A stretch of DNA of 59,030 nucleotides. Source: Octopus bimaculoides (lineage: Eukaryota). How positions within the stretch are numbered: the first letter of the stretch is position 1; every line of letters begins with the position of its first letter. Positions 11,154 to 42,600 of the stretch are shown here, in pieces. The notes beneath the pieces were generated by a model. The model saw only the letters and a list, made by a program, of their open reading frames with translations, had not been told where the DNA came from and searched no databases. Made by a program: the position numbers and the translations under genes. The stretch is from the NCBI RefSeq assembly GCF_001194135.2, contig NC_068987.1:43178204-43237233 (forward strand), given 5' to 3'.

Positions 11154-11163
11154 NNNNNNNNNN

Positions 11164-16527: not shown

Positions 16528-17286
16528 TTAATAACAATCCAAAACATTTTCATCGTCTTCCTCACTTATCACTCCTTCATCACAATCAGCAAGTATGTCT
16601 TCGATTAAAGATAGTGGGTTCTTTATGTATAGATCGCAGTTCATTTGACAATCCTGTAAATAACTACTTACATCAAGTTTGGAAAGCATTTCTACAAAAG
16701 CCACGCCTTTATGTTTTTTTGCAGACCATTCGCAAGAACGACAACAATCTTTACTACAACATTGGTACAAGTCCTGTGTATCCATATTCGCAGTTTTAAC
16801 AAGACATTGCCCAATGTCCTCCAACTTGATATGTTCAGCTAAAAATTTCTTCAAATTAACAAGGACACGGCCAGCTTCTTCTTGCACACTGTAGTCACAG
16901 TCTCGATAGGCTAAGAGTAAAGAATCGATGCAGTTGATCTGCTGAAATTTAGAGAGCATCTTAAGTATCTTACAATTTGTACAAGCTTTACATATTCCAC
17001 CTGACATGACTAATCCAGCTGCATATGATGGAACACTAGTTGTACTTTGTAATGTCAATTGCTCTTCAGAAATGATGATACTCTCCCAATATTCAATGCT
17101 AACCTTCTTCACTTCCCAATCCAAGTCGTCCTGCAACACACTGTACATTGCTTTATGAAAAATTGCAAGTTGATTACTACTATGCACAGTTTTTGACAAT
17201 TTCAGAAGGAATTTTGCAGCTGCCCGCCGTGCAAAGGCTTCACTATCCGTTTCAAGAATGTTCATAATGTCTTGTTGAATATCAGC
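16528..17286 (-). CDS. BRAT1: BRAT1 exon 8 (last coding exon)
   Basis: Acceptor ttttttcag|17286, phase 0. ADIQQDIMNILETDSEAFARRAA…DDLDWEVK…EDDENVLDCY, stop TAA. Confidence 0.93.
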   Translation of the reverse strand, partial: ADIQQDIMNILETDSEAFARRAAAKFLLKLSKTVHSSNQLAIFHKAMYSVLQDDLDWEVKKVSIEYWESIIISEEQLTLQSTTSVPSYAAGLVMSGGICKACTNCKILKMLSKFQQINCIDSLLLAYRDCDYSVQEEAGRVLVNLKKFLAEHIKLEDIGQCLVKTANMDTQDLYQCCSKDCCRSCEWSAKKHKGVAFVEMLSKLDVSSYLQDCQMNCDLYIKNPLSLIEDILADCDEGVISEEDDENVLDCY

Positions 17287-17595
17287 CTGAAAAAATAATT
17301 TCACAAAATACTGGATTAGAAAATGTGAAATGGGTGTCATGGATGAACAGAAATGTAATTTGGAATATTAAGTTCCAGGAATGATGAAACATACAAGTAA
17401 TGTACTATTGTTAGTTCAGTTTACTCTGTCCTACATGTAATGTGAAATCTCATTTAGATATAAGCAGAGCAATAATTTGACATAAATTCATTTAGACACA
17501 AGCAATTTTTTAATTCATTTTATATGTTCTGTTTAATTCCTATGTTTTTCATTTCATGTTGATAAAATAAGTATCATTCATACCCTGGGTGAATC

Positions 17596-20600: not shown

Positions 20601-23600
20601 ATAAATAAATAAATAATAATAATAACTAAGTAACTGTGCAGTTTCCATATACATCAGTAAGGGAAACTGCATACCAAACCCTGCAAAACTGTTGTTCTAT
20701 ATCCCCATCCCCTGTGAATATCTTTCAAGAAATATAAGGAAACAAAAAGGAAAAACTGTTTACTGTCATTGTGGAAATCATGAGAAATGTGCAAAATATT
20801 GAATATAATGTTGGAGTTCAACATACAGTGTTCAAACTTATCGAAATACGTGGAAATGCAGATTGATAAATGAATATGTTGCATGAAATATTGAATTGGG
20901 CAATAAAAAGAGAGGAGAATCTGTTTGCTGTTATTTGGCGCCTAATATTAAATACTTTAAAAAAAGAATTAATATACCTTTTTATTGAATTGGTTGACAT
21001 CATTAATGGCAAGATTGTGTTTGATGAGCATTAGAAAGGGCATTGATATTTGGTTGGAGATTGGTGAGTTTTAATCATAAGTCACCACTCTCTTCCAGGT
21101 TCAGTCTGTTTCTCTGCTTTGTTAGAAATGCATTTGTATGCCTAAAACCAACTTCAACCATGTACAAATTTGGGAATGCAACTAAAAATAGCTCAACTGT
21201 TGCACTAAGCTTGGGATATTTAGTAGCAGTATTTACATTGCTCCAATAGTCTCTGAGGCTTTTACTTCTGAACAATGATGTAGCTTCGAGTTTCACACAC
21301 ATATCGAGTTCATCTTCTAAGTGAGATTCAATGTCTGCATTTTCTATTTCCAAATCAAATGGTGTAACAATCCAGTTGGATACATGCATTTTTTCCAGGT
21401 CCTTGAAACATACTTTAAAGTCTTCTCTTAATTTTTCAAGGTGCTTTATGTATATATCTAAATCATAGTCTGAAATATTTTCATCTTCCAATTGCTGCAA
21501 ATTTGAAAAATGTTTAAAATTTCTATGTGCCAATGAAAATTTAACCCTTTAGCATTTAAACCGGCCATATCCGGCCAAAAGTATTCTGCCTATTCTATGT
21601 TCAAACTGGCCAGATCTGGTCTCTCACACCAACCCTACAATATGGTTTTAAAAATTAACAGCTACCTCATCAAAATCTCATAGCTATGAGATAATGCTTG
21701 ATTAGTTCAAAACAATGTGGATAAAAAAGCATTAATTATGGCAGAATAATGTGCACACTAAAGGGTTAAATATCCCTATTTTGACTTGGAAGCCCATTAG
21801 GATTGAACAACTGTAACATCTTTACCTTGCAGACGATTCTGTATTTCATTAGATTTTGAATATAGATCTGCTAAATAGAACAGATGGTTCTGACACATTT
21901 CCAACTCATCACACAGTGTTGGGTCCACATCTGGAAGAAGCTTCACAGTTGAGTCATAGAAGTCAACAAGTCTTTGCAAGCTATCACCACTTGACAACCA
22001 CCTTACCTCAGTGTGCAAATGTAATTGGTTCAAAGTTTCATCATTTTTTTTCACATAACATTGCAAATATTCACGAATTGAGAGGATGAACTTTAATTTT
22101 ATTGACTGACCTGATACACACTTTTAAGGCACCATGCAGTTCACCACTAAGTTTTTGGCTACAAGATGGTGTCTGTACATACTGTTCACACAGTGAACAG
22201 TATGTACATTGGGAACCTAGGTGGCAAATCATTGTTTGTGCACCATCAGCAGCCACAGCAGTAATATTCCTGAGGGGAACATTGCGTTTCTTCAAATAAT
22301 CCTCCAAATACAGAAAACTTCTCTCACCTTTTGCATCACCTTTGTCAACAATGCACTTTAGGCTTGGACTATAATACCTCACACAGGCCATGAGAATATT
22401 TGAACTGCCAAAAGTTGATTCATTGAGTTGAATAGAAAACTTGCAATGTTGAAGCTCAGATGCCAAGGGTCTCTCCACATCATCAGTCATCTCATCAATG
22501 CATTGCTGCACTGTATTTGCACTTAATGGTATGCATTTTAGAACAGGTTGAGAGTCTTTCTTCATAACATTTTCAATCACATCTTTAATTGCTGGTATTG
22601 TGCTCTCTTCACCAATGGTATATGATTTTCCTTTCTTTGCTATATTAAGGGAGATGCAGTATAATGTCTTCAGTCCTCTTTCATTATCAGCACTGGCAGA
22701 TGCTTCAAAAAATTTCTTGAAGTTTGGTTGATTTCTAAATTTTTCTTTCAGCATCTTCAAAAAATCAAGAATGAATCTTTTCAAGGTGGTCTTTCAATTT
22801 CGTGGGTTTCGTGGCATCATTACTGAAAGCCTTTTCGCATAACAGGCACATCGGCATTGTTTCATTAGTAAATGAAGGTAAGAATCCAAACTTCAAATAC
22901 TCTTGTGAATATTGTCTGCACTTCTTAGCATTAGCGGCTATCATTGTGCTTACTAGAAATAGGTAAATTTAAACAGTAAATGCACAGTTATCAGTTCACT
23001 GACACCACTCCAATAGCTATGGGTGTCTCTGGACTAGTTGGCACCAATGGCCATCTGATGGTGGCTCTGGCCAGCAAGCATGTGCTACATATCAGGCACT
23101 GAGTTGATCTATGTCTCTCTCTCCCTGTATGTGTGTGTAGTGGTTGGAATGTTTGTGTGTATTTGTATGTTTACACACCACCATTCTACACTCAGTTGGG
23201 TTCCATCTCTGCAATGTTCGATGTTACTGTAAGTGAAAGAATTGTCACTGCTGCCTCTGTGTGACTGTAGGTTTGTATGAGCACTAACTATGTTGGATGG
23301 TCAGCAATATATGTATCAGAAAGTTGTATTTTATGTATTTGTAATCCTTATATGAATGTCAGCTTTCAAGCCCAAATGTTCAATTGACTCCACTTCTGAC
23401 CCCCCCCCCCCCGGCACCTATCAACCCCTTGAATTGTCTCATCGACCCCTGATATCAGCCACTTTGGAGACCCCTGGTCTAAAGTTTTAAGCTTTGTAAT
23501 AGGAAGTGAATAGAAAAGATAGGAAACATTTAGATATTCTAAGTGTTTTATCTAAAAGCTATATACCTGTGTTCCATACCCACTCAGGAAAGCTGTCAGT

Positions 23601-26600
23601 GGTGAAAGTTGATTTAAATAGTGTTTAATACATTCTTAATCTTTCAGTAAACATCACTGGATAGACAAAAGTTCAGAGGTGACCAATACAAACTTATTCC
23701 AAGGATTACCTCACTGTGGAACTAATTGTCTTTAATTCCTGTAATCATCTGTCCAGCCTTACTCATCTCTTTCTTTTTTACATTCATGTGTACCAATGTG
23801 AATATTGTGAAGTGTTTATGTTTTTGTAAAAGGGAGGAACTTTCTAAATAAGAGATATAAGTTACATTAATATTTACCTTTAAATGTAGTGTCCCGCAAA
23901 ATAGCAGGAAGTCCAGTGACATAAAACCAATTAAAAAAAGACAAAAGAATTTTTAAAAATACAGACAACAGAAACAAGACAACTTACTGTTAGAAGCTGC
24001 AAAACTTTTAGAGAGAAACTCCATAGCAGAATCCCTGATTTCCCACTGAGGATGACACAGACAATACTTAATGGCACTAGACACTTTGCTTGGTAAGTCT
24101 TTTACTGTGGAGTTAGTCATGTTATTGCTGGTGCCTTTGTCTGTTGAATCGATGGCATCTTTCATCTTCAGCACTGGTAGCATGTATAACCAAAGACAAT
24201 CAAAAGACTGACTGACAACCTATTGTAAAAACACATTGGTATAATTCTTCAGATATGTCTCAAACTCTCTTATGACATTTATTTCTCTTTCTCTCACATT
24301 TATATCAATTATCTTGTGCTTGCATGGAGTGAATTGTCTTTACAGTTGAATACCATGCTTCTGCTAATAACTCAACTGTGAAGTTGATGTCTAGTTGTGT
24401 ATCCAGACACTCAAACTAGAATAAAAAAGCTTTGTCTTTCACAATACATTGACAATAACATTAGGTTCAGTAACATTAGAAGCATCAGTTGTGGTGTGCA
24501 AGAGAGACGATTGCACTGGTATGGACATGTGGTGAGAATGGATGAGGATAGCTGCGTGAAAAAGTGCCACACCCTAACAGTTGAGGGAACCCGTGGAAGA
24601 GGTAGGCCCAGGAAGACCTGGGCTGAGGTGGTGAGGCAAGACCTTCGTACATTGGGCCTCACTGAGGCGATGACTACTGACCGAGACCTTTGGAAATGTG
24701 CTGTGCGTGAGAAGACCCGGCAAGCCAAGTAAGATCGTTGCCAGTGCCCCTGGACTGGTTCTCGTGCGGGTGGCACATAAAAGACACCATTTCGAGCGTG
24801 GCCGTTTTCGTGCGGGTGACACGTAAAAGCACCCACTACACTCTCAGNNNNNNNNNNAGGTGGTGAGGCAAGACCTTCGTACATTGGGCCTCACTGAGGC
24901 GATGACTACTGACCGAGACCTTTGGAAATGTGCTGTGCGTGAGAAGACCCGGCAAGCCAAGTAAGATCGTTGCCAGTGCCCCTGGACTGGCTTGTGCGGG
25001 TGGCACATAAAAGACACCATTTCGAGCGTGGCCGTTTTCGTGCGGGTGACACGTAAAAGCACCCACTACACTCTCAGAGTGGTTGGCGTTAGGAAAGGCA
25101 TCCAGCTGTAGAAACTCTGCCAAATTAGACTGGAGCCTGGTGTTGCCATCCGGTTTCACCAGTCCTCAGTCAAATCGTCCAACCCATGCTAGCATGGAAA
25201 GCGGACGTTAAACAATGATGATGATGATGTTAATCTTATAGCAATTGTATCTCTATGGATATCATACCCTAGATTTCCTCTTCTCCACTACCTCTATTGA
25301 GTCTTACTTTTAAATACTCTACTAAACTTTCCTTAAGACAAGAGCTTACACAAGATGAAGCTAAACCACATTGATCTCACTAGTCTGTGCCACCTCATCA
25401 GACTAAATAACAAGTCTAGAGCTGCACTAACTTTCCCCAAGAGCTGAGTCTAGACAAAAGAGTTTGCTAACAGTACTTCTGATTGATTACATAACAATAC
25501 TCACCCACTTTGAAACATAGTAAATGGGTGAACTTGTGTTTAGGTTAGAAATCATTATTTTTGGCTCTACAATGGCAAGTATCATAGAGCAAGAAGAAAA
25601 AGACTCCTGTTGTGTCAAATCTGAGCCAGTTTTGATTTCTGGTTGAAAGTAGCTTGAGAAAGATAGCAACATCAATTAATCTCATCTTCCTCCTTGATGT
25701 GTGTGTGTTTTGTAAGATAACTATTATCCATATATTGGATAAGTTTGAGGTATGTGCCATAGTATGGTACTAAGTTCTTGGCAGACTTTATAATTTGGCT
25801 GAGACTCTCACCTGAAGTCACTTAATACACAACACTAATGCTCTTTACATAAAAAAAATCCCTCTCCATCGTTCTTCCAACATAAGAAAAGTTACAGGAA
25901 TCTATTTTGATCAGGTACCCATCCTAGCCTCAACAGTTAACTTTTATAGAAAAGAGGCATCGTCATCTCTAATATATTACTGATACTTTGATACTTATTT
26001 TATTAATTCCAGGAGTATAAAAAGCAAAGCTGATTCTAGCAGGATTTAAACTCATAGGTAGAGAGACTAATGTAAAACAATCTTTTTCCATTTCTAACAG
26101 CTAAATGTTCCAAGAAATGCTATAAAATTCATTTCTGATAGAAGCAGGGGAGTTTCAATTTGACCAATATTTATTTTAATGAATTTCTTGAAATATACAG
26201 AACAAAATTGACTGCATAGGAATTGAACTCAGAAAGAAAGAGATGTAATTAATTACCACAAGCCATTAAGTTAGATGCTCTACCATCCACTACATTCAAA
26301 GAAATTCTACTATCTATCACACTCAAAGAAATGCCATAGATGTTTATTTTCAATGAAACACCAAGAATGAAGTTGAGTCTGTACCACTCACCAAAAGATT
26401 CTGGCCAATTTCTACCACAATGTTCACTAAAATATTGATCAAAATAACTTGGCAGTCTTGACTGATAAGAAATTCTGATTTGTTGCCTGCAAATAGAACA
26501 TATACAAGGGAGTAATACAACAGAGCATGGCAGGCAAATGTGAAGATATATAGGGTGAGGCAGAGGGGAAGGACGTTTTTGAAAAATTCAAAAAATTATT

Positions 26601-28671
26601 TATTTTTGCTGCAAACAAATTTTATTGACATCAATGTGTTCATATTGAATTAGCATTTGTCAAAATCAAGTGTGGAAAACAACATCCATCATGTGGTGTC
26701 TGTTTCCATTGATGCATTTCTGAAGGCATTCTTGGAAGTTGGCCTCCACTCTCTCCAGCATTGCTCTGTCAATTTGGGTGACCTCCACGCAATAGCTTCC
26801 TTCAAATTGTCCAATGTACAGGGCTTATGCGCATAGACACGTGCCTTAAGGTTTCCACACAAGAAATAATCACACATGGACAAATCAGGGGACTGAGAGG
26901 CCAAGGAACATCAGCAAACCTGGAAATGAGGTGGTCACCAAAAAGAGGGCGAAGAACATCCATTGATGTTCTGGCTGTTGTCGCCCTGTCTTACTGAAAC
27001 CACACACATTGAATAGACATACATTTTCATCGTAATTCAGGAACAAAGAAGTTGTTTATCATCTCGATGTAATTCTTGGAGTTCACAGTAACAGCATTTC
27101 CATTATTGTCTTCAAAAAAGTAACGACCAATGACGGCAGCTTTTCCAACAGCACACAGACCATCACTTTTGGGTTGTGCAGTGGTCTTTCATGCAGTTCT
27201 CTCGGATTTTCAAGAGCCCAATAATGACAGTTCCGTTGATTAACCATGCCATTGAGATGAAAATGAGCTTCATCAGTCATTAACAAAATGAGGTTGTCAT
27301 TTGCCTCAAAAATTGCTTCCATCTGATATGCAAAGTTAAGCTGCTGTGCGTAGTCCCATGGTTTTAACTATTGCCCAATCACCAATTTGTACAAGTGGAA
27401 ATGCAGGTCTTCATGCAAAATATGCCTTACCAATCAATTACCAATGCCAAGTTCAGTGGAATGCTTCTGAGCAGAGCAATTTGGACTCCATATCAAAGCT
27501 TGTCTGATGCGTTCCACATTTTCTGGGGTTTGTACCATCTGTGGCGCCCCTACCAGTCTACTATTCATTAGTGTACCTTGTATATGAAGTGCATTCACCC
27601 AACGTAAGATGGTGTTACAGGTGGGAACAGCCTGATCTTGGTGAATGTTGAAGTAGTGCTGAAACTCATGCTGAACTGCTGTGACAGACTTGTTATTCTT
27701 TACATAACTGTCGTAGGCAAACATGCACAATGGCTTCACCTGAAAAAAAAAATGCTAAGAAACTATGGACAGAATGGTACCTATCGGACATATGTCCCTC
27801 CCCCGGGGCTGAGTAATAGCCATGTCAAAAAACGTCCATCCTCTCTGCCCTATTCAGTACAAAGAGAGATAAATAGAGAGATTAATAGATTAAGTATAGA
27901 ACACAAAGATATATCAAACATTGTTTTTACATTTCCCATTCTTTACAGGAAATGGAAAGTGAGAAACTTCTAAAAATATTAAATGAAATGTAAAAAACAC
28001 AAAATCATAATTTTGTTAAATAAATATGAACCCAAAATTGAAAGAATGATCAAGAATAACAAAATCTTGATGCTTGGCATAGTAAAGACCAAAATACTAA
28101 TTAATAACTATACTTTTAGAGTACATATACATATATATGATGGACTTCTTTCAGTTTCTGTCTACCAAATTTACTCACAAGGTTTTGCTTCACTCCAGGC
28201 TACAGTAGAAGACATTTGCCTGAACCCAAAATCATATGGTTGGGTTACAAACTTTCTACCACACAGCCACACTTGTGCCTAGCCATGCCTGTACTTCCAA
28301 CACACAATGACTACTTTAAAGCTATTTTCACTGTTAAAGCAAGGTTTTGTTAAGAATTCTCCCATTATATACAACTGTATTTTAGTTATCATCATAAATA
28401 TGGAAAACAGTAATTACATGCCAACTTTTGAAAGTAGTGCAGCATTTTAAGTAATAATTTGGTGGAATTGGAAATGACTTTGAAGAACTGGTAATATTCT
28501 GATGTCTGCAAGGATTCTGTGTCAGTGGTCTTGTGAAAGAACTTCAAGAAACATGTTGTGGATAATTGGATTGTAGTTTTTATGATGTCTTTCTGAAAGA
28601 AAGATCACACGTAAATTACATATATAACAGTACATATCACATTATTTACATTATATATATGTATATATATG

Positions 28672-28736
<65 letters not shown>

Positions 28737-31700
28737 AGAGAGAGAAAGAGAGAGAGAATATATGCCTGTATGTCTATGTGTATATAAAATGCATATTATC
28801 CCTTATCTAGTGGTCAGTGTGAAAACTAGGGATAGACAAGTGGTTGGTGAGAGCTGTATAAGTCATGTCAGTAAGGTGAGGGTTGGCAATGAGTATAGCA
28901 AAGAATTCATGGTATAAGTATGGATTCACCAAGGATTAGTCCTCAGCCCCCTCTTGTTCATCATAGTCCTCCAGATAATAACAGAGAAATTCAAGACAGG
29001 TTGCCCCTAGGAGCTCCTCTATGCTGATGACCTTGTTCTTATAGCTGAATGACTACCAGAACTAGAGAAGGAGTTCCAGGTGTGGAAGAAAGATCTAGAA
29101 TCGAAGGGCTTTAATGTTAACCTAACAAAATCCAAAGTCTTAGTAAGGAGCAAAGCAGACAAATCACAAATCCCCTCAGGTAGATGGCCCTGCTTGATCT
29201 GTAAGAAAGGCGTAGGTAGAAATTCTATAAGATGTACCCGGCGTAAGCTATGGACACATAAGAGGTGCAACAATATCAGAGGTAAGTTAACAGGGAAAAT
29301 AGTTTTTGTGTGTGGTAGGTGCACAGATACAATGAACACTATAAATGTTCAGAAAACAGACTCCATCAAATGCCAGTAGGGAAAACTAGAAGTAGTCAAT
29401 AGTTTCCATTACAGAGGTGACCAAGTTAGTAGTGGGAGTGGATGCTCTGAGAGCATAGCTGCTACAAAAAGAATAGGTTGAGCAAAATTCCTACCTCTGT
29501 TGGTAACAAAGGGCCTCTCCCTCAGAGTGAAAGGCAGATTATATGATACCTGTGTGTGAACAGCAGTGAAACATGGGCTGTGACTGTTGAGGACACGTGT
29601 AGGCTTGAAAGAAATGATGCTAGTATGTTTCGCTCAATGTGTAATGTCAGTGTGCATGCACGATAGAGTGTAAGCATCATGATAGAAAAGTTGGGCATAA
29701 GAGGCATCAGATGTGGTGTACAAGAGAGACGACTGCAGTGATACGGTCATGTGATGTGTATAGATGTGGACAGTTGTGTGAAGAAGTGCTGATCTCTACT
29801 AGTGGAAATTCGTTGTAGAAGAGGGAGACCCAGGAAGACATGGGACAAGGTGGTGAAGCATGTTCTTCAAAAGTTGGGTCTCATGGAAGCAATGACTTGT
29901 GAATGAGACCTTTGGCAATATGCTGTGCTTGAGAAGACCCATCAAGCCAAGTGAAATCATAGCTGTGGTCGTTGTCAATGTCGCGTAACTGGCACCCATG
30001 TTGGTGGCACGTTAAAAGCACCTTTCGAAAGTTGGGCTTCATGGATGTAATGTAGTCAATGCTGGTGTCATGTAATAGCACCATGCCAATGGCAATGACA
30101 AATGACATGGTTGAAAAGAACACCCATCAAATCAAGTGAAATCATAATCATGCCAGATATTGGTGTCATACAAACTGACACCTGTGCAAGTGGCATATAA
30201 AAGCACCCATAACACTCTTGTAGTGGTTGGCATTAGGAAGAGCATCTAGCCATAGAAACCATGCTAAATCAGTCTAGAGTCTGGTGCAGCCCCTCAGCTT
30301 ACCAGCCCTGGTCAAACAATCCAATCCATGCCAGCATGGACAGCAGACATTAAATGATGATGGTGATATATTTTTGATGGACACTCCCATCAGTTTTGAC
30401 GTATGAGGATCCAACAACTTACACTTTCTTTTTCAGTCATAATGCTTATGCCAAATGTGACAATTGAGTCCTGCCAATGATTTGCAAGGAAACCGGTAGA
30501 TGTTGTAAGTATGAGGATTACAAGTTAGTGCAAGCAGTATATCTGCAGCAGCTTTTCTCTTTTGCCTTGCACTCCTAAGTCTGATAATGCTGGTTGACAA
30601 GACAAGACAGCTCCATTTTGTTTGCTCCAAGGCTGTTTGATTAAAGGTGTTGTGAGCTATATTGACTGCTGAGAGGTTACCCTTCAGCTTATCATTATAT
30701 CTGAGCCATAGTCAACCAACATTCCTATACCCACTATCAAGCATATACATATATTTGGTGTGTTATGTGAATTTATGGAAAGGTATCCCATAGAACTCAA
30801 CAAATTTGTTAAAAATGGAGAAGAGAAGATGTTAAAATTTGAAAGAATTTTAATACACACATACAATCATTTCAAACAGCGATATTAAAACATGTATATT
30901 CATGGTTGAATAGTTAAATTCATTTGATTAAATTAAATTAATTATATATCACTGTTATCCTCAGTGCAAGAAGTATAAACAAAAAATTATTATTACAGAG
31001 GACTTGCTACAGGAAATAACAGAGAATAATTTCAGATATACATATTTATCCTTATGAAAATTACAAGCATAATAAAGAATGTGAGTCTAGTTATGTATAA
31101 ACTAAAATTAAGGCAACTAATGGTTATTTGAAAATGTAAGTGAAAAAGAGCAAGTAGATAAGTAATTTAAATTCCAAATAATTCATCTATGAAAGAGAAG
31201 TTTTATATAAATGTCCAATGGAAAAGCATAGTTATGTTTGAATTAGGATATGACTTGAAAGTTATAAACAATATTAGGTATGGTGTGTATTTTAAAAAAT
31301 TGTGCGTGAAAATGAAATTAAACTAGTGAATGTAATATATAGGAGGCTGCTAGAATGCAATGAAAACAAGTATTAGGGGTAGAAATGCTTAAAGAGCTAC
31401 ATAAAATGGAGTTGTGTTAGTTTAAGAACTAATATTTGTTTATGTGTATTAAATATAAGGAAATTAGTTGTTAATATTACAGATTTAGATAGTAAATACT
31501 TGCTGTGGCTATAAATATTAAAAAGAACGTTCAGAGGTTTAATTAGCTGTAGTAAATTGAAAATAACAATGTAGGAGTGATAATATAGCTAGGAAAGAAA
31601 GGTAGAAAAAAATTTAAATTATAAATATCAATATGTAATACATTGACTATGTTTAGGTATAAATAAAAGTATGAATTAAGAAGCTAGCTTGGCATAAAGT

Positions 31701-32055
31701 GAGAGGGAAGTATATAGTAAAATTATCTAAGTAATAAGTATTCAAGTAATAGAAGGTCACATAAGTATACAGAATATACAAAATAATTCGTATATAATGT
31801 CATATAAAAAAATCTTATAAGGGAAAAAAATTTTTTTAGTGTATACTAATATGTTAGTAGAGGACATATCTGCAAAATAGCATACATAGATGTAGGTATT
31901 CTAGCTGTTTTATTTGGGGGTGTACATGAAGGAAAGAACACAGTACAAAAGTAAATAAGTATACTCATACCAGTGCAAAGAGAGAGAAAAAAGAAACCAA
32001 ACAGATATAGATATAATTATAATTACCCATATGAAAAATGTTATTATATACATAC

Positions 32056-32095
<40 letters not shown>

Positions 32096-33559
32096 AACAT
32101 ATGTATATGTGCACACGTTCATATTAAAAATATGCACCGGTATGAGTATACTTACTTATTTTTGTACGGTGTTCTTTCCGTCATGTGCACCCCCAAATAA
32201 AACAATTTCAAAAACAACTAGAATACCTACATCTATGTATGCCATTTTGCAGATATGTCCTTTACAAACGTATCAGTATACACTAAAAAATTGTTTTTAT
32301 ATGACATTATATATGAATTATTTTGTATATTCTGTATACTTATGTGCACCCACTACTCATAAAAAAATTTTTTCTTCTATTCATAATGCACAATAACCTT
32401 CTATTATTTGAATACTTATTACTTGCATAATTTTACTATATACTTCCTTCTCACTTTATGCCAAGCTAGCTTCTTAATTCATACTTTTATTTATACCTAA
32501 ACGTAGTCAATGTATTACATATTGATATTTATAATTTAAATTTTTTTCTACCTTTCTTTCCTAGCTATATTATCACAACTACATTGTTATTTTCAATTTA
32601 CTACAGCTAATTAAACCTCTGAACGTTCTTTTTAACATAGCCACAGTAAGTATTTACTATCTAAATCTGTAATATTAACAACTAATTTCCTTATATTTAA
32701 TACACATAAACAAATATTAGTTCTTAAACTAACACAACTCCATTTTATGTAGCTCTTTAAGCATTTCTACCCCTAATACTTGTTTTTGTTGCATTCTAGC
32801 AGCCTCCTATATACTACATTCACTAGTTTAATTTCATTTTCACGCACAATTTTTTTAAATACACACCATACCTAATATTGTTTATAACTTTCAAGTCATA
32901 TCCTAATTCAAACATAACTATGCTTTTCCATTGGACATTTATATAAAACTTCTCTTTCATAGATGAATTATTTGGAATTTAAATTACTTATCTACTTACT
33001 CTTCTATAGAGGGAACATCTCATAAAACGTTTTTCACTTACATTTTCAAATAACTGTTTGTTGCCTTAGTTTTAGTTTATACATAACTAGACTCACTTTC
33101 TTTATTATGATGCTTGTAATTTTCATAAGGATAAATATGTATATCTGAAACTATTCTCTGTTATTTCCTGTAGCAAAAATACTCTGTAAAAATATTTTTT
33201 TGTTTATACTTCTTGCACTGAGAATAACAGTGATATATAATCAATTCAATTTAATCAAATTAATTTAATTATTCTATCATGAATCTTCATGTTTTAATAT
33301 CGCTGTTTGAAAAGATTGTATGCATGTATTAAAATTCTTTCAAATTTTAACATCTCTTCTCATTTTTAAACAAACTTGTTGAGTTCTATGGGATACCTTT
33401 CCATAAATTCACATAACACACTATATATAAGTATTATTTTCATATTTGCAAACTTACGCCAGTAAGGTACTGGCAAAATATGAAGAATCTTTATTAGAAA
33501 TCGTTTTTCAGAACCCTCCAAATTAAAGGACGAAATGTAATTCAATGTTTTCAGACACT

Positions 33560-33639
<80 letters not shown>

Positions 33640-36600
33640 TTTGTGGGTAGGTGGATGGCTGGATTTAGTTAGGTAAGAAGACAGACAGCTAATAGACATG
33701 AATGTCATTTGCCACATCTTAGTTCATCAAAAATTCGGTAGTCATTACAAAAGCTCCCCACATAAAAATACAAAGAAATTAAATTATTCAAAGCTATGAT
33801 AATATATAAGCGAACAATGAAACAAATTTTCAAAATTAATTGACAAATTCTTTTATGTGGATAGAAAAGTTAATGATTTAAGGTAAGTTTATCTACCTGA
33901 AGTAATTCAGGGTCTACAAGTCTCTCCATGCACTCAATGGTATTACAGAGGCATGCCTCACATTCTGGTGGGTGGATGTCATTTAAAGATATTTGCTTGT
34001 TACAGCCAGTAGAGTTGGTGATATAATTAAAAATCTTCAATTTAGGTTGGTAATATTTCTCCATCAATTCAGAAAACAATGCATCATCAGGGTATGTAGA
34101 TAGGAAACTGCTATTAAAAAACATTAATTCCATTGTGTAAGAGGTATAATATAACTCTGCATGCTTTGAATATAAAACAATACACCTTACACAGTCAAAT
34201 GTTGCACTCAGAACACCTGCATAACTCAAAACAATCAATACAGATTTGGGTTGGAAAAACACACACACATAAAGTGTTAATAAAGTTTTAACCATTAAAA
34301 ACTGGACAAACAAAATTTATACCAAACATACTGACCTTTTCATTAGTTTCTCTACAAAGCTTCTCACTCTGTCATCATCTTCTTTGCTATCAAGTTGATG
34401 AAATATTACCAGAACTTTCTCTATCTTCTCATTTTTAGAGATACTTGATTAAAAATGAGACACATAAAAGTAAACATTAGAAAATTGGCAACCATTAGGC
34501 TATAGTGTGGAAGAAGAGTAGCTGGCATGACATTATAGGGAGCAACCAATGTAGAACTGTGGGATAACAGGAGAGGCTCCAAGTTACAGACATTATATGG
34601 GTAATGTAAAATTGTAGGATAACAGTTAGAGGACATAAGTTATAGATATCATACAAGCACAGTAGAGGGAAACAGAAAGATAAGACAGCAAAATTGCTGT
34701 CTTCTGTGTAAATGCTAAAATTAACAGACACATAAAACCCATGTTAACAGGAAAACAAACAAAACAAAAAAAATGTGAGCCAACAGCTGGTAAGATCACA
34801 GCTGAAACATCTCTGATTATAGATGTTTCATTAGCAATGACATGTGGACTAAACCAGCGCTTGATGAACCTATAAATATCAGGCTTCATCAAAGAGATAT
34901 TAGTAAAATCCTCCCGGCTTTATTAATGAGAACTCAAAATTAGAGTTTATCTCATTGTTATCATCATTATATGATAATTTTTCTTTTGGACAAGTTTAAA
35001 ATTATTTAATTTTATTAAGCAGAGCAATTTGTCCAACTTTTTTTCAATCCTCATAACCGAACTCTCAGCAGTGTGGGGTGGGGTCTGGCCCCACCCAACG
35101 AGAAATACTAGGCTACACATTTCTACCAGCCACAAAACCTCCTATACAATCAACTTATTACAAATAACATTCAAATCTCTCTCTAATCTTATAAACAAAA
35201 GAAATAATGTAATCAAATATATGCTATGTTTAAGAAAAAGAAAAAAAAAAGACATGATGGTCACTGTTGGAATGCCTATGATCAGAGGTCTGCTGGATTA
35301 GCTATGACTTAGGGAGTATATAAAAAAAAAACCCAACAAAACTTACTGATGATCGAGTAAAAGACAGAGGTATAAGTCCATAGCAACATCCCATGATTGC
35401 GATGAAGTTATAAGCTGATGAAGTTCTGAAAAGCTATCTTTATGGTTCACTGTCCAATTCCAAATATCTTTGCAAGTACCTCCAGCATCATTAAGGATAT
35501 CAAATAAGAGTTCTTTGGAATGCTTGGATTTAGAATTGGAGCCACTGGGTGTGTTATGGCAGATGACATCCCAGAAAGTGTCTAAAAGGTTGTCTCGCAT
35601 CTGAAGCACCTTGAGTGAAACATCACTGATTTGGAAACTTTGAATCAGGAGCTGACTGAGGAATTTGCTGGCTTCTTTGGTGAGGAAGATGCTTGATTCT
35701 TTATAAATCACATCCAAGGCTTTGTTTGGAACATCTGAAAAAAATATAAAAAATTAAAAATGACTAAGATACTGAGAAGAAGCAAGTATTGGTCTACCGG
35801 CTCATAAGTTGAAAGTTCAAAACTAATGAAGATATTTTATTGTTTCTTTTTTATATTTTATTAATATTTAACATTTAGTATGGCACAACACTACCTCCAC
35901 TGGTTAGAACACATCATAATACATATGTCTCAAATGTGCCTCCCCCATCAACTCCTCTTTGTGGAGTTGGCTTCAGGCACTAGACCATGCAGAGCTCCCA
36001 AATCCCATTTCTGAGACCAGTTCAAGGACACTCTTCTCCACAGCTCCATTGACCCAAATATCTGGGAAACAATCACCAAGAACCACCAACACTGTTGGCA
36101 TGCCATTGTTAAGGGAATGGACCAGATGGAAAATAACAGACATCAAGAGGCAGAGATCAGATGTCAAAGACACAGAGTGACTCACACTTCCTTGTCCCTG
36201 GATTACTAGAAAGTGTATCAGTGAGTATCGAGATATTGTGGGAGAGAAGTGTGTGCAGATAGATAATGGTATGCTTGCACTTAGTAATGTGGACAAGAAA
36301 GAGGCATGGTAAAGTTACTATGCAAGACTGCTGAATGTAGAGAATGAATGGGATAAAGGGAGGCTCCCTCATGTGAACGCAACAGAGAGAGACCAGCTAT
36401 CCTAGTGAACAGCAGTATGGTAGATGAGGCAATTAAAGACATGAAAACTGGGAAAGCCCCTGGTCCATCCGGAATCATGGCTGAGATGCTCAAAATATAC
36501 AGTAAGGTGGGATACTAGTTAGTCACTTGCATAGTTAATCAGGCCATTCAGAAAGATGTAATAATAGTGACTGGTGTAGCAGCATTATTGTTAGCTGTTA

Positions 36601-39600
36601 CAAGGATAACAATGATGCTTTAGATAGAAGCAATTATAAAGGCATCAAACTCCTGGACCAGATGATAAAAATTACAGAGAGAATTATAGACCAATTAATT
36701 AGGCTAGATGAAATGCAGTTCAGGTTCATCTGGGGAAGAAGCACTACTGATGCTATTTTCATAGTCAGACAACTGCAAGAGAAGTACTTAGCTAAGAATA
36801 AACCATTATACTTAGCATTTGTTAATCTAGAGAAAGCTTTTGATAGAGTAACCTGTTGTTTGATATGGTGGGCTCTGAGGAGGCAAGGAATAGATAAGTG
36901 GCTTGTGGAAGCAGCACAAGTCATTTACAGAGACACTCTCAGTAAGGTGAGAGTTAACCACGAGTACAGTGAAGAATTTGGTGTACAGGTAGGTGTTCAT
37001 CAAGGCTCAGTCCTCAGTCCCTTCTTTTCCATCATTGTCCTCCGGGCCATACACAGTGTAAGCTATGGATACACAAGAGATGTTGTGGATTAATAGGAAG
37101 GTTAGAGAAAGTAGTGCTTGTATGTGAAAGATGTACAAGATCCATAAAAACTAGAGACTTGGGAAATTGATTCTCCTAAATGCCCTGGTGGCTCATTAGA
37201 GGTGATAGATAATTTCTGCTACTTAGGGGATCAAATTAGTCATGGAAGGAGAATGCACGGAGAGTGTGACAGCTAGAATAAGAATAGGATGAAGGAAATC
37301 CAAAGAGTTGTTACCTTTGTTGATATGAAAGGTTTCTCTCTCCAAGTGACAGGCAGATTGTATGATGCATGTATATGAACAGTAATTCTACGTGGTAGTT
37401 GACAGAATGCTAGTGTTTTAAAGGAGAAGTTAAGCATAAGAGGAATTAGATGCAGTGTGTAAGAGAGAAGACTGCTGGTTTGATCATGTATTGTGAATGG
37501 ATGCCAACAGCTCCATAAAGAAGTGCTGATCTCTCAAATTAGATGGAACATGTGGAAGTGGGAGATCCAGGAAGAGATGGGATGAAGTACTGAAGGACGA
37601 CCTCAGGTGAGATGACTAAGGACAAGATGCCTGGCACCTTGCTGTACTAAAGAAGACCTGTACTCCACAGCAGAAGTGTTAAGTGTCATCCCCTTGGTGA
37701 AGAGAACTGGCCTGCAAGAATCCTGTGCTGGTTCCATGTAAAAAGCACTCTTGCCAGTGCCTGTAAAAGCACCCAGCACACTCTGTAAAGTGGCTGGTGT
37801 TAGGAAGAGCAGTCAGCCATAGAAACCAGGCCAAATCACACTGGAGTCTGGTGCAGCTCTCCAGCTTGCCAGCTCTGGTCAAACCGTCCAACCCAGGCCA
37901 GCATGGACAACAGACATTATGATGATGATGTATAAAAATAACATTAGGATTATAACTATTGGAGCTGCCAGTCAGACAATTTACTGAAGGGAGAAATTTG
38001 CTTTAGACAAATATATCCAGGATACAACCTAAATATTTGAGGGGAGGTTTTGGGACTGACAGTGGAGTTACTCATCACATGACTTGCTGAAGAAAGTATT
38101 GGAATTACCATTTCTAAAAGTCACTATGATAGTTCTAACAAATTTTAACATCATATAATATTATGGAGCACTACATAATTATATATACAGCACTTGTAGA
38201 AAAAGCATAGGTAGAAACTCCATAAGATGTACCTAGTGTAAGCTATGAACAATTTAAGAGGTGCAGCAATATCAAAGAAAGGTTAACTGGGAAGATAGTT
38301 TTGGTGTGTGGCAGATGCACAGGTGCAATAAACATGAAGATGTACAGAAAATAGATTCTATCACATACCGGGGGGAAAAACTAGAAGTAGTTGATAGCTT
38401 CCGTTGCCTAGGTAACCAAGTCAGTAGCAGGGGTGATGCTCTGAGAGCATAGCTGCTAGAATAAGAATAGCCTGGGTAAAGTTCAGAAAACTCCTACATC
38501 TGCTGGTAACAAAGGGCCTCTCGCTTAGAATGAAAGGTAGACTGTATGATGCCTGTGTGCAAACAGCCATGCTACATGGCAGTGAAACATGGGCTGTGAC
38601 TGCTGAGGACATGCGTAGGCTTGAAAGAAATGAAACTAGATGTGTAATGTCAGCGTGCATACATGACAGGGTGTAAGCACCCTGAGAGAAAAGCTGAACA
38701 GAAGAAGCATCAGATGTGGTATGCAAGAGAGACAACTGCACTGGTATGTTGCGTACAGATGAGGAGAGCTGTATGAAGAAGTGTCACACCCTAACAGTGG
38801 AGGGAAACTGTGGAAAAGGTAGACCCAGGAAAAAAAGGGATGAGGTGGTGAAGCATGACCTTCAAATGTTGGGCCTCACAGAGGCAATGACAAGCGACCA
38901 AGACCTTTGGAGATATGCTGTGCTTGAGAAGACCTGGCAAGCCAAGTTAGATCGTAGTCATGGCCAATGCCTGTGTCGCATAATGGGCCCATTTAAAAGC
39001 ACCCTTCAATTGTTGGGCAATATGCCGTGCTTGTGAAGACCTGTTGAATCAAATGAAATTGTAGTCATGGCCGATGCCAGTACCATCTGTCTGGCACCCA
39101 TGCCGGTGGCATGTAAAAAGCATCATTCAAGCGTGGCTGATGCCAGTGTTGCCTGACTGGCATGTAAAAAGCACCATTTGAGTGAGACCAATGCCAGTGC
39201 CGCCTGACTGGCACCCATACTGGTGACATGTAAAAAGCACCATTCAAGTGGAGCTGATGCCAGTGTGGCCTGACTGACTCCCATGTTGGTGGCACGTAAA
39301 AAGCACCCACTACATTCTTGGAGTGGTTGGCGTTAGGAAGAGCATTCAGCTATAGAAACCTTGCTAAATCAGATTGGAGCCTGGTGCAGCTTCCCAGCTT
39401 GCCAGTCCGCAGTCAAACCGTCCAACACATGCCAGCATGGAAAGCGGACGTTAAACAATGATGATGATGATGATGAACACCATACAATTATATGAAAAAG
39501 CAAACAATTATATGGAGCAGCATACAATATTATTACCACAGTTCATTACATGAAATCACATTTAATATTTACAACAGATTTACTGGATAAAGATAAATAA

Positions 39601-42600
39601 CATCAATATAATAACTACCAAAATTTATGATTGACATGGGAACTACTGGTTCTGAAACTCCTTCGTTCCTTTTAAAGCCAATTTTCCTGTTACATAGTTT
39701 TCTAGAATAATGTAGACATTTACAAGTTTTTAACAAGATAAAATATCATGCAATGCTATTAAAGCATGATTAAATAGTTCAGTAAGTGAAAATATATTTA
39801 GTATTTAGTGCTTAATTACCACAATGAAGAAAAAGAAGAAAAAAGTAGATTGTCCATGTTGGCATGGTTTGGACTCCAGTCTGATTTGGCATGTTTTCTA
39901 TAGCTGGATGCCCTTTCTAATGCCAACCACTCCAAGACTGAAATTTGTGCTTTTAGGTGCCACCAGCAGGGGTGCCATTTGTGTGACATCAGGATGCTTT
40001 ATCGTATCACTGACAAGGGTGCCAATTTGCATGACGACAGTGTCTGCTATGACCACAATTTTGCTCGGCTTGATGTGTCTTCTTCTCAAGCACGACATAA
40101 TGCCAAAGGTCTCAGTCGTTGCCTCCACGAGACTCAGTACTCAAAAGGAACTCAGCCACTTTGCCTCTGTGAGGTCCAACGCTTGAAAGGTGTTCTTTAC
40201 ATGCCACCAGCATGGGTGCACTTGGTTTGATGGGTCCTCTCAAGCACAGCACATTGCCAAAGGGCTCAGTCACTAGTCATTGCCTCTGAGAGGCTCAAAG
40301 TTTGAAGATCATGCTTCACCACCTCATTCCATGTCTTCTTGAGTCTACCTCTATCACAGGTTCCCTCCACAGTTAGATTGGCACTTCTTTACACAGCTGT
40401 CCTCATCAATATGCATCACATGACCACACTAGCACAGTCATCTCTCTTGCACGCCGCATCTGATGCCTCTTATGCCTAACTTTTCTCTCAAGATGCTTAC
40501 ACTCTGTTGAACATGCACATTGACATTGCACATCCAGCAAAGCATACTGGCTTCATTTCTTTCAAGCCTACACATGTCCTTGGCTGTCACATTTCACTGC
40601 CATACAGCATAGCTGTACACACACAGGCATCAAAGAATCTGCCTTTCTCTCTGAGAGAGAGGAAATTTGTTGCCAGCAGAGGTAGGAATTCTCTGAACTT
40701 TGCCCAGCTTAATCTTATTCTCACAGCTATGCTTTCGGAGCATCCACCTCCAGCGGTCACCTAGATAATGGAAGCTATCTACTACCTCTAGCCCCCCCCC
40801 CCGACAGTTGATGGAGTCTATTTTGTGCACATTTTCAGCGCTTGCTGTACCTGTACATCTTTCACATACAAAAGCTAATTTCTAGAAAAATGCAAATCAA
40901 TATGTATGTATGCATCCAACACCTGTCATCATTAAATGATGATGATGATGATGATGATATGGATGTGTGTGTACATATATATGTATGCATATTTCAGGTA
41001 TCAGATCTGATGATCAGAGACTTGCTACATGTATGCTACTACAATCTGTACATAGTCAGGCTGAAGGCAACTAAATAAGCAACTCCCCCTTCTCACTAAG
41101 CCTGCTTAGAAATGAAGATGATTTTTAAGACTGTAAGATGTAAAAACCTGTGAAAGAACAGATGAACTCACAAAAGTCAATGGCCACCCAATTGTGCATG
41201 TAAACACAAGAAGATATTTTTCCTGAACCCTTTGGTGTTTTGAAGTCTCTGGGGATATGTTGCTCTTTTCGCTTTTCTTGTTATTAGTTTAATGATTTCA
41301 AACTTTGAGAAAATAGAACTTGTGTCACACAAACATATTTCTCTACAAAATTCGATGCATTGGTACTTTTTGTGCCTCATTTTTTTTCTCCCTTTCTTTC
41401 CCAAGTGCAGGTGAAAACTAGAACCTCTTGAAATCATAGTGGTTGACCTTTTTGTTATGGTGGTTGCGGTATTACAAGTGTTTGCAGCAATTACATATCA
41501 CAGTTTCCATAGTTTCTCACTCATGAGGGAACACAGAAGATGTAGCATGGGCAGAAGCAGTCATGATTCTCTAGCTGCCTGTGTAATTGTGTCCCTCATT
41601 GAAGTGTTGTTGGTGTCTGAGAGGTGGAACATGCATTGGTTTATGTCTTTGTCATTATGAGAGTTCACAATCATACTCAGTTGTGAACTGACATCTCCCA
41701 TAACCCACTCCATGTCTCTCATTCTCCCTTACACTCTTGCAAGCTCTACTCACTTACACTTCTGGTTCTTTTTCCCTCATTCAAGGTCCACACAGACACA
41801 TCATCACCATTTTATCTCTTCTCTGTTTCACCCTGATCACTACCACCCTCTCTTCAAAATTGTGGGCAGCCAAATACCCCCAGCACAGCAAGAAACCTAT
41901 TCTGCTCAGGACACTTTTTTCATACTTTAACTCCACATCAAGCAAAAAGCTACCTCTTTTAAGTTTGTAGTCTTGTAAGCTACATAGAGATGTTCACTAG
42001 AACTGGTGATGCAAAAGTACATGTTGAAAAGTGGCTGGCATCAGGAAAGGCATCCAGGTATAGAACACATGCCAAAGTAGACTGTTGAGCACAATGCAGT
42101 CCTTGAACCCATCGGATCCTATAAAACCCTCCAACTCATACCTGCATGGAACATGAAGAGTAAATGATGATGATGTGAGTCATGTCTTGTTTGTGAGTGT
42201 TTATGTCAGTACAGAAATACTATTTCCAGCCTCCTGTCTAGAATTAGTAAAGGAAAAGGTAAAAGAATCTCTTACCTGGAAATGTATGAGTTACAGAAGT
42301 AAAACCAGGAATGTGTTGGATTGTTTTGTGTAATGTTGTAAACATAGCAGTCTTTAAGGAGACACATTTTGGCCAATATGTGGAATTAAAAACACTGCTG
42401 TAGAAATCAGTAAACAGTTTCTCATAGTGATTGAATATAACTTCATTCTGAGCTAAACTGCCTGCTATTTGTGTGGCAAACAGGAGTGAGGCATTGCTTG
42501 TGTTCAGTTCAATAACTGAAGCTTTCAGGAAGTCATCAGCCCAGCATAATTTGACTGCTTCAACAGTGGTCACTGGAAAAATAAGAAAATAAACAAAAAT

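What the first reader, a model, noticed from the sequence alone, without database searches (positions are those of the whole stretch)
30758..33421. 2.7 kb foldback palindrome in BRAT1 intron 5, 475 nt from the exon 5 donor
Seen: two 1.2-1.3 kb arms, roughly 90% complementary by eye with a few indels (one ~55 bp extra in the right arm near 32345-32397), a ~155 bp loop with (TG)n, strong purine/pyrimidine strand asymmetry, no ORF and no clear TSD. It resembles no other repeat in the window. Inference: either an undescribed long-TIR foldback transposon (Mutator-, Galileo- or FB-like) or a local inverted duplication. Either way the pre-mRNA could fold into >1 kb of AU-rich dsRNA. Established: coleoid cephalopods have very extensive ADAR A-to-I editing that depends on dsRNA.
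Basis: partly seen in the sequence, partly recalled or inferred. Interest (0 to 1): 0.72.

Follow-up and report, generated by a model that had tools for sequence, protein, structure and literature searches.

The report
Long hairpin-forming inverted repeat in BRAT1 intron
A real 2.7 kb non-coding inverted repeat lies inside an intron of the BRAT1 gene and would fold the pre-mRNA into about 1.2 kb of double-stranded RNA, but it is an ordinary kind of feature and these tools could not settle its origin (local inverted duplication or foldback transposon).

Summary
Arms 30745-31977 and 32133-33434 are 95.6% identical in aligned columns and are separated by a 155-nt loop that contains (TG)17. The arms have no ORF, no tandem sub-repeats and no clean TSD, and no other copy occurs in the window. 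The host gene is BRAT1 on the minus strand; the upstream exon's donor lies 462-475 nt away.

The sense pre-mRNA is predicted to form about 1,170 inter-arm base pairs (MFE -1768 kcal/mol, against about -520 for shuffles), with perfect helices up to 145 bp.

A new detail: a 612-bp core is only 2.3% diverged, against 6.5% for the outer and inner blocks (p = 4e-4). The core is bounded exactly by the two largest indels. This looks like arm-to-arm gene conversion in an old, genuine repeat.

The origin is unresolved. I lean slightly to a one-off local inverted duplication (about 0.4) over a non-autonomous foldback-type transposon copy (about 0.33). Membership in FB, Mutator-FB or Galileo fails on the TSD, and FB also fails on sub-repeats.

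Every attempt to find other copies or an orthologous empty site returned nothing, because the available collections do not hold this genome. Editing, small RNAs and the cephalopod origin could not be tested. Long intronic dsRNA-forming repeats are common, especially in octopus, so interest is modest.

The parts
30745..31977 (.). Left arm of the foldback (1233 nt; purine-rich on the + strand; GC 25.7%)
30758..30803 (.). Outer 46 nt of the left arm, perfectly complementary to 33376-33421 (terminus GTGTGTTATGTGAATTTATGG...)
   Evidence: perfect run of 46 from 30758
31146..31757 (.). High-identity core of the left arm (2.3% diverged from its partner 32396-33002). Candidate gene-conversion tract, bounded by the 28-nt and 49-nt indels.
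   Evidence: Fisher p = 3.7e-4 against the outer and inner blocks at 6.5%
31978..32132 (.). Non-palindromic 155-nt loop/spacer
   Evidence: No SMRTbell-adapter remnant.
32061..32094 (.). (TG)17 microsatellite inside the loop
32133..33434 (.). Right arm of the foldback (1302 nt; pyrimidine-rich on the + strand)
32347..32395 (.). 49-nt segment present only in the right arm (inner border of the core tract)
33003..33030 (.). 28-nt segment present only in the right arm (outer border of the core tract)
33555..33636 (.). (AC)16(AT)25 microsatellite between the exon donor and the foldback
33897..34217 (-). BRAT1 exon immediately upstream (in gene orientation) of the foldback intron. Donor GT at 33896/33895.
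   Evidence: Gene identity.

Best explanation
This is a genuine, evolutionarily aged, non-coding inverted repeat: 1.23 kb and 1.30 kb arms with a 155-nt spacer. It lies in the roughly 9.7 kb BRAT1 intron between the exon at 33897-34217(-) and the next exon near 24.1 kb.

Origin (inferred; a slight lean only). I favour a one-off local inverted duplication. One arm plus the spacer would be ancestral intron sequence, and the other arm would be an inverted copy made by fold-back priming or replication template switching, with the outer junction falling in TA-rich microhomology.

Later history (inferred from the pattern). The arms diverged to about 6.5%. A 612-bp central tract was later re-homogenised by arm-to-arm gene conversion, which stopped at the two large indels.

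What it does (structure computed; consequences inferred from established ADAR and Dicer biology). The repeat is transcribed as part of the BRAT1 pre-mRNA. The two arms snap together into about 1.17 kb of AU-rich dsRNA with perfect helices up to 145 bp. This makes it a passive substrate for promiscuous ADAR hyper-editing, and possibly for Dicer. It most likely has no direct effect on BRAT1 exon recoding.
For: It is real and old:
- The arms differ by 53 substitutions (34 transitions, 19 transversions) and 12 indels.
- The loop is unique sequence with no adapter remnant.
- Divergence is patterned: 2.3% in the core against 6.5% in the outer and inner blocks, p = 3.7e-4, with the core bounded by the 28-nt and 49-nt indels.

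It fits a local duplication:
- A unique spacer separates the arms, as in fold-back inverted duplications (PMC3907307).
- The innermost pairing is a 5-bp GTGCA/TGCAC stretch.
- The outer junction shows a 10/13 imperfect match in TA-rich DNA.
- There is no clean TSD of 2-11 nt at either candidate boundary.
- The arms have no tandem sub-repeats and no transposase remnant.
- No other copy or fragment occurs in 59 kb, although a LINE-like family occurs at least 7 times there.

dsRNA formation:
- RNAfold of the sense strand gives an MFE of -1767.6 kcal/mol, against -500 to -547 for shuffles.
- It predicts 1167 inter-arm pairs, with perfect helices of 145 and 139 bp.

Gene context.

Literature:
- Hyper-editing concentrates in long, nearly perfect intramolecular dsRNA across Metazoa and is exceptionally abundant in octopus (PMC5625713).
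Against: - Copy number in the source genome is unknown. Every search for further copies was uninformative, because the collections lack this genome.
- The 8 nt abutting the perfect termini, TATATTTG and TATATATA, match 6/8 as a direct repeat. Only 2.3% of local 8-mer pairs do as well. This could be a decayed 8-bp TSD.
- The outer 46 nt of the arms are perfectly conserved although that block is 6.5% diverged (chance about 0.05). That is what functional transposon termini would look like.
- Two-TIR Galileo copies with 1.24-1.26 kb TIRs at 95.2% identity are a documented transposon form with the same geometry (PMC3573991).
- The low-divergence core could instead come from assembly or polishing that homogenised reads mapping ambiguously to either arm.
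- No expression, editing or small-RNA data were available.
Confidence: 0.4

Rival explanations
1. A single copy of a non-autonomous, foldback-type long-TIR DNA transposon, consisting almost entirely of two 1.2-1.3 kb TIRs around a short middle segment. It would have inserted into a TA-rich target in the BRAT1 intron. The family would be undescribed, or at least not recognisable here.
For: - The termini are sharp and symmetrical, and the outer 46 nt are perfectly conserved.
- The flanking 8-mers TATATTTG and TATATATA match 6/8 as a direct repeat.
- The left edge coincides with a compositional break, GC 0.40 falling to 0.25.
- The geometry matches documented two-TIR Galileo copies with 1,260/1,241 bp TIRs at 95.2% identity (PMC3573991).
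- Most dsRNA-forming loci in animals derive from repeats (PMC5625713).
Against: - There is no exact TSD of any length from 2 to 11 nt at either boundary. The only 7-nt exact repeat lies 20 nt off the terminus and is expected by chance.
- The arms have no sub-repeats.
- There is no other copy, fragment or related terminus in 59 kb of repeat-rich sequence.
- The terminus GTGTG... does not match any superfamily terminal motif that I know of (from memory, not tested).
- TA tracts are both direct and inverted self-repeats, so the TSD-like signal is ambiguous.
Confidence: 0.33
2. Two independent head-to-head insertions of the same roughly 1.25 kb interspersed repeat, 155 nt apart. This is the usual way inverted Alu-type pairs arise.
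For: This is the most common source of intramolecular dsRNA in animal transcripts (PMC5625713). Other inverted pairs of LINE copies exist in the same gene, for example 38296-38947 / 40220-40877.
Against: - Both arms share both end points, to within a few nucleotides.
- Neither arm has a poly(A) tail, microsatellite tail or TSD of its own.
- No third copy or fragment occurs in the window, whereas genuinely abundant families occur 7-10 times there.
- Two hits within 155 nt from a rare family is improbable.
Confidence: 0.07
3. An assembly artefact: a false palindrome built from a chimeric read, or from two haplotypes or paralogues joined head to head.
For: - The scaffold has gaps (N runs at 1537-1650, 11154-63, 24848-57 and 45496-45978).
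- Perfect helices of 139-145 bp exceed typical k-mer sizes, so this region is hard to assemble.
- The low-divergence core could be a polishing effect.
Against: - The arms differ by 4.4% plus indels of 49, 28, 14 and 12 nt, with a normal transition-biased spectrum. Chimeric-read palindromes have identical arms and no natural spacer.
- The loop is 155 nt of ordinary sequence with no adapter signal (score 11, against a null of 9.1 +/- 1.8).
- The nearest gap is more than 5 kb away.
Confidence: 0.08
4. A selected functional RNA element, whatever its origin. It could be an ADAR-recruiting 'editing inducer element' that raises editing at BRAT1 exonic sites, or an hpRNA-type source of endo-siRNAs.
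For: - The long stable hairpin lies 462 nt from an exon.
- In mammals, intronic long stems up to hundreds of nucleotides away increase site-selective editing by recruiting ADAR (PMC5654063, PMC3479170).
- Drosophila hpRNA loci are long inverted repeats that give endo-siRNAs (PMC10317233).
- The homogenised core could be read as maintenance of pairing.
Against: - There is no evidence of conservation. The arms' 6.5% divergence is lower than the 9.8% exon divergence from the nearest available relative, so the structure is probably lineage-specific.
- The arms have no complementarity to any exon or other sequence in the window.
- No homology to any gene that siRNAs could target was found.
- Gene conversion needs no selection.
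- No editing or small-RNA data were available.
Confidence: 0.08

Closest known systems
Intramolecular dsRNA from intronic inverted repeats that are hyper-edited by ADAR (inverted Alu pairs; palindromic Harbinger repeats in frog; abundant long dsRNA loci in Octopus bimaculoides; PMC5625713)
   Same: Both are long, nearly perfect hairpins inside a pre-mRNA intron, non-coding and AU-rich. The predicted duplex is about 1.17 kb, with perfect runs up to 145 bp.
   Different: The arms are 4-5 times longer than an Alu pair and are not recognisable as an interspersed repeat. Editing was not observed here.
Fold-back / template-switch inverted duplications with a single-copy spacer (Hermetz et al. 2014, PMC3907307)
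   Same: Both have two inverted copies separated by a short unique spacer, short inverted homology at the spacer border, and no TSD.
   Different: The human cases are megabase-scale, terminal, and have spacers of 0.77-70 kb. This one is interstitial, has 1.2 kb arms and a 155-nt spacer, and needs a second junction, which here lies in a TA-rich tract.
Galileo two-TIR derivatives (P superfamily, Drosophila; PMC3573991)
   Same: The geometry is nearly identical: TIRs of 1.24-1.26 kb at about 95% identity around a short middle segment, with no coding capacity.
   Different: Galileo has 7-bp TSDs, many genomic copies, THAP/P-type autonomous partners, and is known from drosophilids. None of these was found or testable here, and the 7-bp TSD is absent.
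Foldback (FB) / Mutator-Phantom foldback elements (Drosophila FB; Tm1 of Meloidogyne, PMC3169594)
   Same: Both are long inverted arms that make up most of the element.
   Different: FB and Tm1 arms are built from short tandem sub-repeats with terminal motifs and 9-bp TSDs. These arms are complex unique sequence with no sub-repeats and no 9-bp TSD.
Palindrome arm-to-arm gene conversion (e.g. human Y-chromosome palindromes; from my own knowledge)
   Same: A tract of much lower arm-to-arm divergence lies inside an older inverted repeat.
   Different: The scale differs (0.6 kb tract here, against kilobase to megabase arms). The tract is inferred from one sequence only.

Membership tests
Foldback (FB) / Mutator-Phantom foldback elements | TIRs composed largely of short tandem sub-repeats with terminal motifs (PMC3169594) | tested here: not met
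   TRF and the repeat finder detect only trivial AT-rich micro-repeats of 31 nt or less in the arms.
Foldback (FB) / Mutator-Phantom foldback elements | 8-10 bp (usually 9 bp) target site duplication | tested here: not met
   At boundary 30758/33421 the 9-mers match 1/9. At boundary 30745/33434 they match 3/9.
Foldback (FB) / Mutator-Phantom foldback elements | Multiple dispersed copies, with autonomous members encoding a MULE-type transposase | not testable with these tools
There is no second copy in the window and no protein-level hit.
Galileo (P superfamily) | Long TIRs of 0.3-1.2 kb (PMC3573991) | tested here: met
   Arms of 1233 and 1302 nt, 95.6% identical.
Galileo (P superfamily) | 7-bp target site duplication | tested here: not met
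   The 7-mers abutting either boundary match 1/7. The only exact 7-mer (ATATTTG) lies 20 nt beyond the right terminus and is at chance level.
Galileo (P superfamily) | Family members encode a THAP/P-type transposase | not testable with these tools
   This copy has no ORF, and no genome is available in which to look for autonomous partners.
Local inverted duplication by fold-back / template switching | Single-copy spacer between the inverted and non-inverted copies (PMC3907307) | tested here: met
   The 155-nt loop is non-palindromic and unique apart from its microsatellite.
Local inverted duplication by fold-back / template switching | Short inverted microhomology at the spacer/duplication junction | tested here: inconclusive
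   The innermost 5 bp, GTGCA/TGCAC, pair perfectly, but they cannot be told apart from the rest of the arm. The outer junction has a 10/13 match in a TA-rich tract.
Local inverted duplication by fold-back / template switching | Only two copies in the genome, and an ancestral state with one arm plus spacer in relatives | not testable with these tools
   No genome or orthologous intron was retrievable. L001 and L002 do not cover this intron.
ADAR hyper-editing substrate / editing inducer element | Long, largely double-stranded intramolecular RNA within a transcript | tested here: met
   1167 predicted inter-arm pairs; MFE -1768 against about -520 kcal/mol for shuffles. The repeat lies inside a BRAT1 intron on the transcribed strand.
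ADAR hyper-editing substrate / editing inducer element | Observed A-to-G clusters; for an EIE, a nearby selectively edited site that depends on the stem (PMC5654063) | not testable with these tools
   No RNA-seq data were available.
hpRNA (endo-siRNA hairpin locus) | Arms homologous to a target gene, and 21-22 nt siRNAs produced | tested here: inconclusive
   No homology to any protein or to other window sequence was found. Small RNAs could not be tested.

The most novel reading that the evidence does not exclude
The hairpin is kept by selection rather than being neutral, with its pairing refreshed by gene conversion. It would act in cis on BRAT1, either as a very long ADAR-recruiting editing inducer element or as an intronic hpRNA-type endo-siRNA source. 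It could also be the first described copy of a sub-repeat-free long-TIR foldback transposon family in this lineage.
Probability: 0.08. Interest if true: 0.65.

Novelty: new member of a known kind. Interest (0 to 1): 0.3.

Why it matters
If it is expressed, this is an unusually long and clean natural dsRNA (about 1.2 kb, with perfect runs up to 145 bp) inside a housekeeping gene. BRAT1 is an assembly factor for the Integrator cleavage module.

It would be a convenient single-locus reporter for ADAR hyper-editing, Dicer access and dsRNA sensing in an animal with very active editing. It would also be a small natural example of arm-to-arm gene conversion in a palindrome.

However, intronic dsRNA-forming repeats are common and mostly neutral. 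Nothing here ties this one to BRAT1 regulation.

Tried and rejected
1. Looking for other copies through spurious ORFs.
   - A 736-aa concatenation of all stop-free arm translations, searched against 5.8 billion proteins, gave no hit.
   - The longest arm frame (91 aa), searched exhaustively against 1.84 billion representatives, gave none.
   - An exact ORF look-up found nothing on record.
2. Empty-site test through relatives.
   - The protein of the upstream exon found no candidate.
   - L001 (Logan SRR11869391) covers only the last exon, at 90.2% DNA identity.
   - L002 (ENA ERZ21867824) is syntenic but distant. It does not reach this intron and has no arm-like sequence.
3. Exact terminus and core patterns in genome contigs (twice) and metagenome contigs (twice) gave 0 hits. 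These collections are prokaryotic or metagenomic, so the nulls say nothing about copy number.
4. 'Interrupted repeat' empty-site test inside the window. The flanking LINE-like copy ends at about 30371. Both 30372-30744 and the right flank are unique, so no test was possible.
5. Rfam gave only microsatellite-driven miRNA-like hits far below gathering scores. I rejected these.
6. The palindrome does not continue through the loop.
7. SMRTbell adapter remnant in the loop: not significant.
8. Literature:
   - 'foldback' + 'cephalopod' + 'transposable' found 0 papers.
   - The run accession SRR11869391 found 0 papers, so the relative's species stays unknown.
9. The weak TMEM175 Pfam hit at 51439-51900 is rejected. 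That block aligns with the BRAT1 N-terminus.
Full report
OBSERVATION

The repeat finder returns nine collinear inverted blocks between 30745 and 33434. A gapped local alignment of the left side against the reverse complement of the right side defines the two arms:
- Left arm: 30745-31977 (1233 nt).
- Right arm: 32133-33434 (1302 nt).
- 1154 matches and 53 mismatches, or 95.6% identity in aligned columns. Counting gaps, identity is 86.7-88%.

A further 13 nt match 10/13 in TA-rich sequence.

The other details also check out:
- The loop is 155 nt, is not itself palindromic, and contains (TG)17.
- The '~55 bp extra' is a 49-nt right-arm-only segment at 32347-32395. A second right-only segment of 28 nt lies at 33003-33030.
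- Strand asymmetry is strong. Purines make up 60% of the left arm and 41% of the right arm. GC skew reaches about +/-0.55, and GC content is about 26%.
- No stop-free frame exceeds 91 aa, and none has a Pfam hit or a homologue.
- Sensitive blastn finds no other copy of the arm in the 59 kb window.
- This is the longest and by far the most tightly spaced inverted repeat in the window. All the other inverted pairs are oppositely oriented copies of a LINE-like family.

GENE CONTEXT

The host gene runs on the minus strand.
- The last exon (within 16531-17367) aligns to human BRAT1 residues 594-809 and ends in ...DCY.
- Its closest database relatives carry Pfam PF28344 (BRAT1).
- A concatenation of the upstream exon-like blocks hits human BRAT1 at E = 1.8e-11 and the Drosophila orthologue at 6e-5, in collinear order.
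- The exon just upstream of the foldback (in gene orientation) is 33897-34217. Its donor GT is at 33896/33895, which is 475 nt from 33421 and 462 nt from 33434.
- The next exon lies near 24.1 kb, so the intron is about 9.7 kb long.

I see four coding exon blocks upstream of this intron within the window. 'Intron 5' is therefore plausible but cannot be confirmed without transcripts. I could not verify the cephalopod origin. The two related contigs I retrieved (Logan SRR11869391; ENA ERZ21867824) carry no organism label, and no paper mentions the run.

NEW ANATOMICAL DETAIL

Divergence between the arms is not uniform:
- Outer block, 30745-31145: 6.5% diverged.
- Core block, 31146-31757: 2.3% diverged.
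- Inner block, 31758-31977: 6.4% diverged.

The difference between the core and the rest is significant (Fisher p = 3.7e-4). The core is delimited exactly by the two largest indels, the 28-nt and 49-nt right-only segments.

The substitution spectrum is ordinary, with 34 transitions and 19 transversions.

The simplest reading is an old inverted repeat (K2P about 0.068) in which a roughly 0.6 kb tract was later homogenised by arm-to-arm gene conversion. The heteroduplex would have stopped at the indel heterologies. A technical alternative is that consensus polishing of reads mapping ambiguously to either arm homogenised the core.

Either way, the amount and pattern of difference argue against a chimeric-read palindrome. 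The loop also shows no hairpin-adapter remnant.

The baseline arm divergence (6.5%) is lower than the 9.8% DNA divergence of the last exon plus 3' UTR from the nearest available relative. The structure probably formed after that split and is lineage-specific. This is an inference.

RNA STRUCTURE

I folded the sense pre-mRNA (minus strand, 2781 nt).
- MFE is -1767.6 kcal/mol, against -500 to -547 for shuffles.
- There are 1167 inter-arm base pairs, 16 of them G-U.
- Uninterrupted helices reach 145 and 139 bp.
- The duplex contains about 930 adenosines on the sense strand.

The claim that the transcript could form more than 1 kb of AU-rich dsRNA is therefore supported computationally.

What follows is inference from established ADAR and Dicer biology and from published surveys:
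- Hyper-editing across Metazoa concentrates in long, nearly perfect intramolecular dsRNA.
- Octopus has an exceptionally high density of such loci (PMC5625713).

The most likely fate of this hairpin is promiscuous ADAR hyper-editing, possibly with some dicing, followed by degradation with the intron.

The arms have no complementarity to any BRAT1 exon. A direct role in exon recoding is therefore not indicated. An indirect 'editing inducer element' role (PMC5654063) is possible but has no support here.

ORIGIN

I could not resolve the origin. Several points favour a one-off local inverted duplication by fold-back priming or template switching:
- A unique spacer separates the arms, as in sequenced fold-back duplications (PMC3907307).
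- There is no exact TSD of 2-11 nt at either candidate boundary.
- The arms have no tandem sub-repeats and no transposase remnant.
- The outer junction lies in TA-rich microhomology.
- No other copy or fragment occurs in a window where truly repetitive families recur 7-10 times.

Other points favour a non-autonomous foldback-type transposon:
- The termini are sharp and symmetrical, and the outer 46 nt are perfectly conserved within a block that is 6.5% diverged (chance about 0.05).
- The 8 nt on each side, TATATTTG and TATATATA, match 6/8 as a direct repeat. Only 2.3% of local 8-mer pairs do as well.
- The geometry duplicates documented two-TIR Galileo copies, with 1,260/1,241 bp TIRs at 95.2% identity (PMC3573991).

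TA tracts are self-complementary, so the same bases produce both the 'TSD-like' signal and the 'IR-extension' signal. That evidence is ambiguous.

My estimates are:
- Local duplication: about 0.40.
- Foldback transposon: about 0.33.
- Assembly artefact: about 0.08.
- Two independent insertions: about 0.07.

MEMBERSHIP IN NAMED FAMILIES

- FB / Mutator-Phantom foldback elements need sub-repeat TIRs and a 9-bp TSD (PMC3169594). Both were tested and not met.
- Galileo needs a 7-bp TSD, which is not met. Only the TIR length fits.
- The element may work like a foldback element at the DNA level, but it should not be filed under any of these families.

WHAT COULD NOT BE DONE

The decisive tests are copy number in the source genome, the state of the orthologous intron in relatives, long-read support, and RNA-seq and small-RNA evidence. 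None was possible. The reachable DNA and protein collections do not contain this genome's non-coding DNA (nulls).

VERDICT

This is a well-formed example of a known kind of feature: an intronic long inverted repeat that forms dsRNA. It carries a neat signature of gene conversion. There is no evidence that it regulates BRAT1. Interest is about 0.3.

Noticed in passing
window 10.1-11.1k, 24.4-25.2k, 28.9-30.0k, 38.2-39.0k, 40.2-40.9k, 44.9-45.5k, 55.3-56.5k: A LINE-like family (Pfam RVT_1 plus a PHD-type finger) has at least 7 copies or fragments at 74-90% identity. Oppositely oriented pairs lie inside BRAT1 introns, for example 38296-38947 / 40220-40877 (76% identity, 1.3 kb spacer). These could form additional, weaker intramolecular dsRNA.
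   Followed up: partly
window 30184-30371 and at least 10 other sites (e.g. 37752-37934, 39273-39468, 42621-42801, 25040-25225): A short repeat of about 180 nt (a SINE-like element or the 3' tail of the LINE) is the most abundant repeat in the window. One copy ends 373 nt from the foldback.
   Followed up: no
window 7456-8016 (+); L002 20305-20784 (-): A MATH/TRAF-domain exon lies convergent to the BRAT1 3' end, about 9 kb away. The same BRAT1 / MATH arrangement is present in the distant relative's contig L002, so synteny is conserved.
   Followed up: partly
window 21078-22968 (-): A run of long open frames (240, 157, 108 and 67 aa) lies inside a BRAT1 intron. By eye they look like a hAT/ZBED-type transposase-derived sequence, but they gave no Pfam hit at E <= 0.01.
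   Followed up: partly
window 48377-50621 (+): Open frames with protease-like and RT-like motifs (e.g. ...YYQIPM...) suggest an LTR-retrotransposon fragment in the first large BRAT1 intron. This was recognised by eye only.
   Followed up: no
window 721-1056 (+), 26692-27754 (-), 57352-57621 (+): There are Tc1/mariner-like transposase fragments. One lies in the same intron as the foldback and has a weak DUF4817 helix-turn-helix hit.
   Followed up: partly
window 51439-51900 (-): The weak Pfam TMEM175 hit (22.9 bits, below the cut-off) is probably spurious. This block contains the BRAT1 start region (Met...DDTSLQKLCDF), which aligns to human BRAT1 residues 22-101.
   Followed up: yes
window 1537-1650, 11154-11163, 24848-24857, 45496-45978: The scaffold has four assembly gaps (N runs of 114, 10, 10 and 483). 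None is within 5 kb of the foldback.
   Followed up: yes
window 33555-33636: A compound (AC)16(AT)25 microsatellite lies between the exon donor and the foldback. With the (TG)17 in the loop, it yields only sub-threshold Rfam miRNA-like matches.
   Followed up: yes
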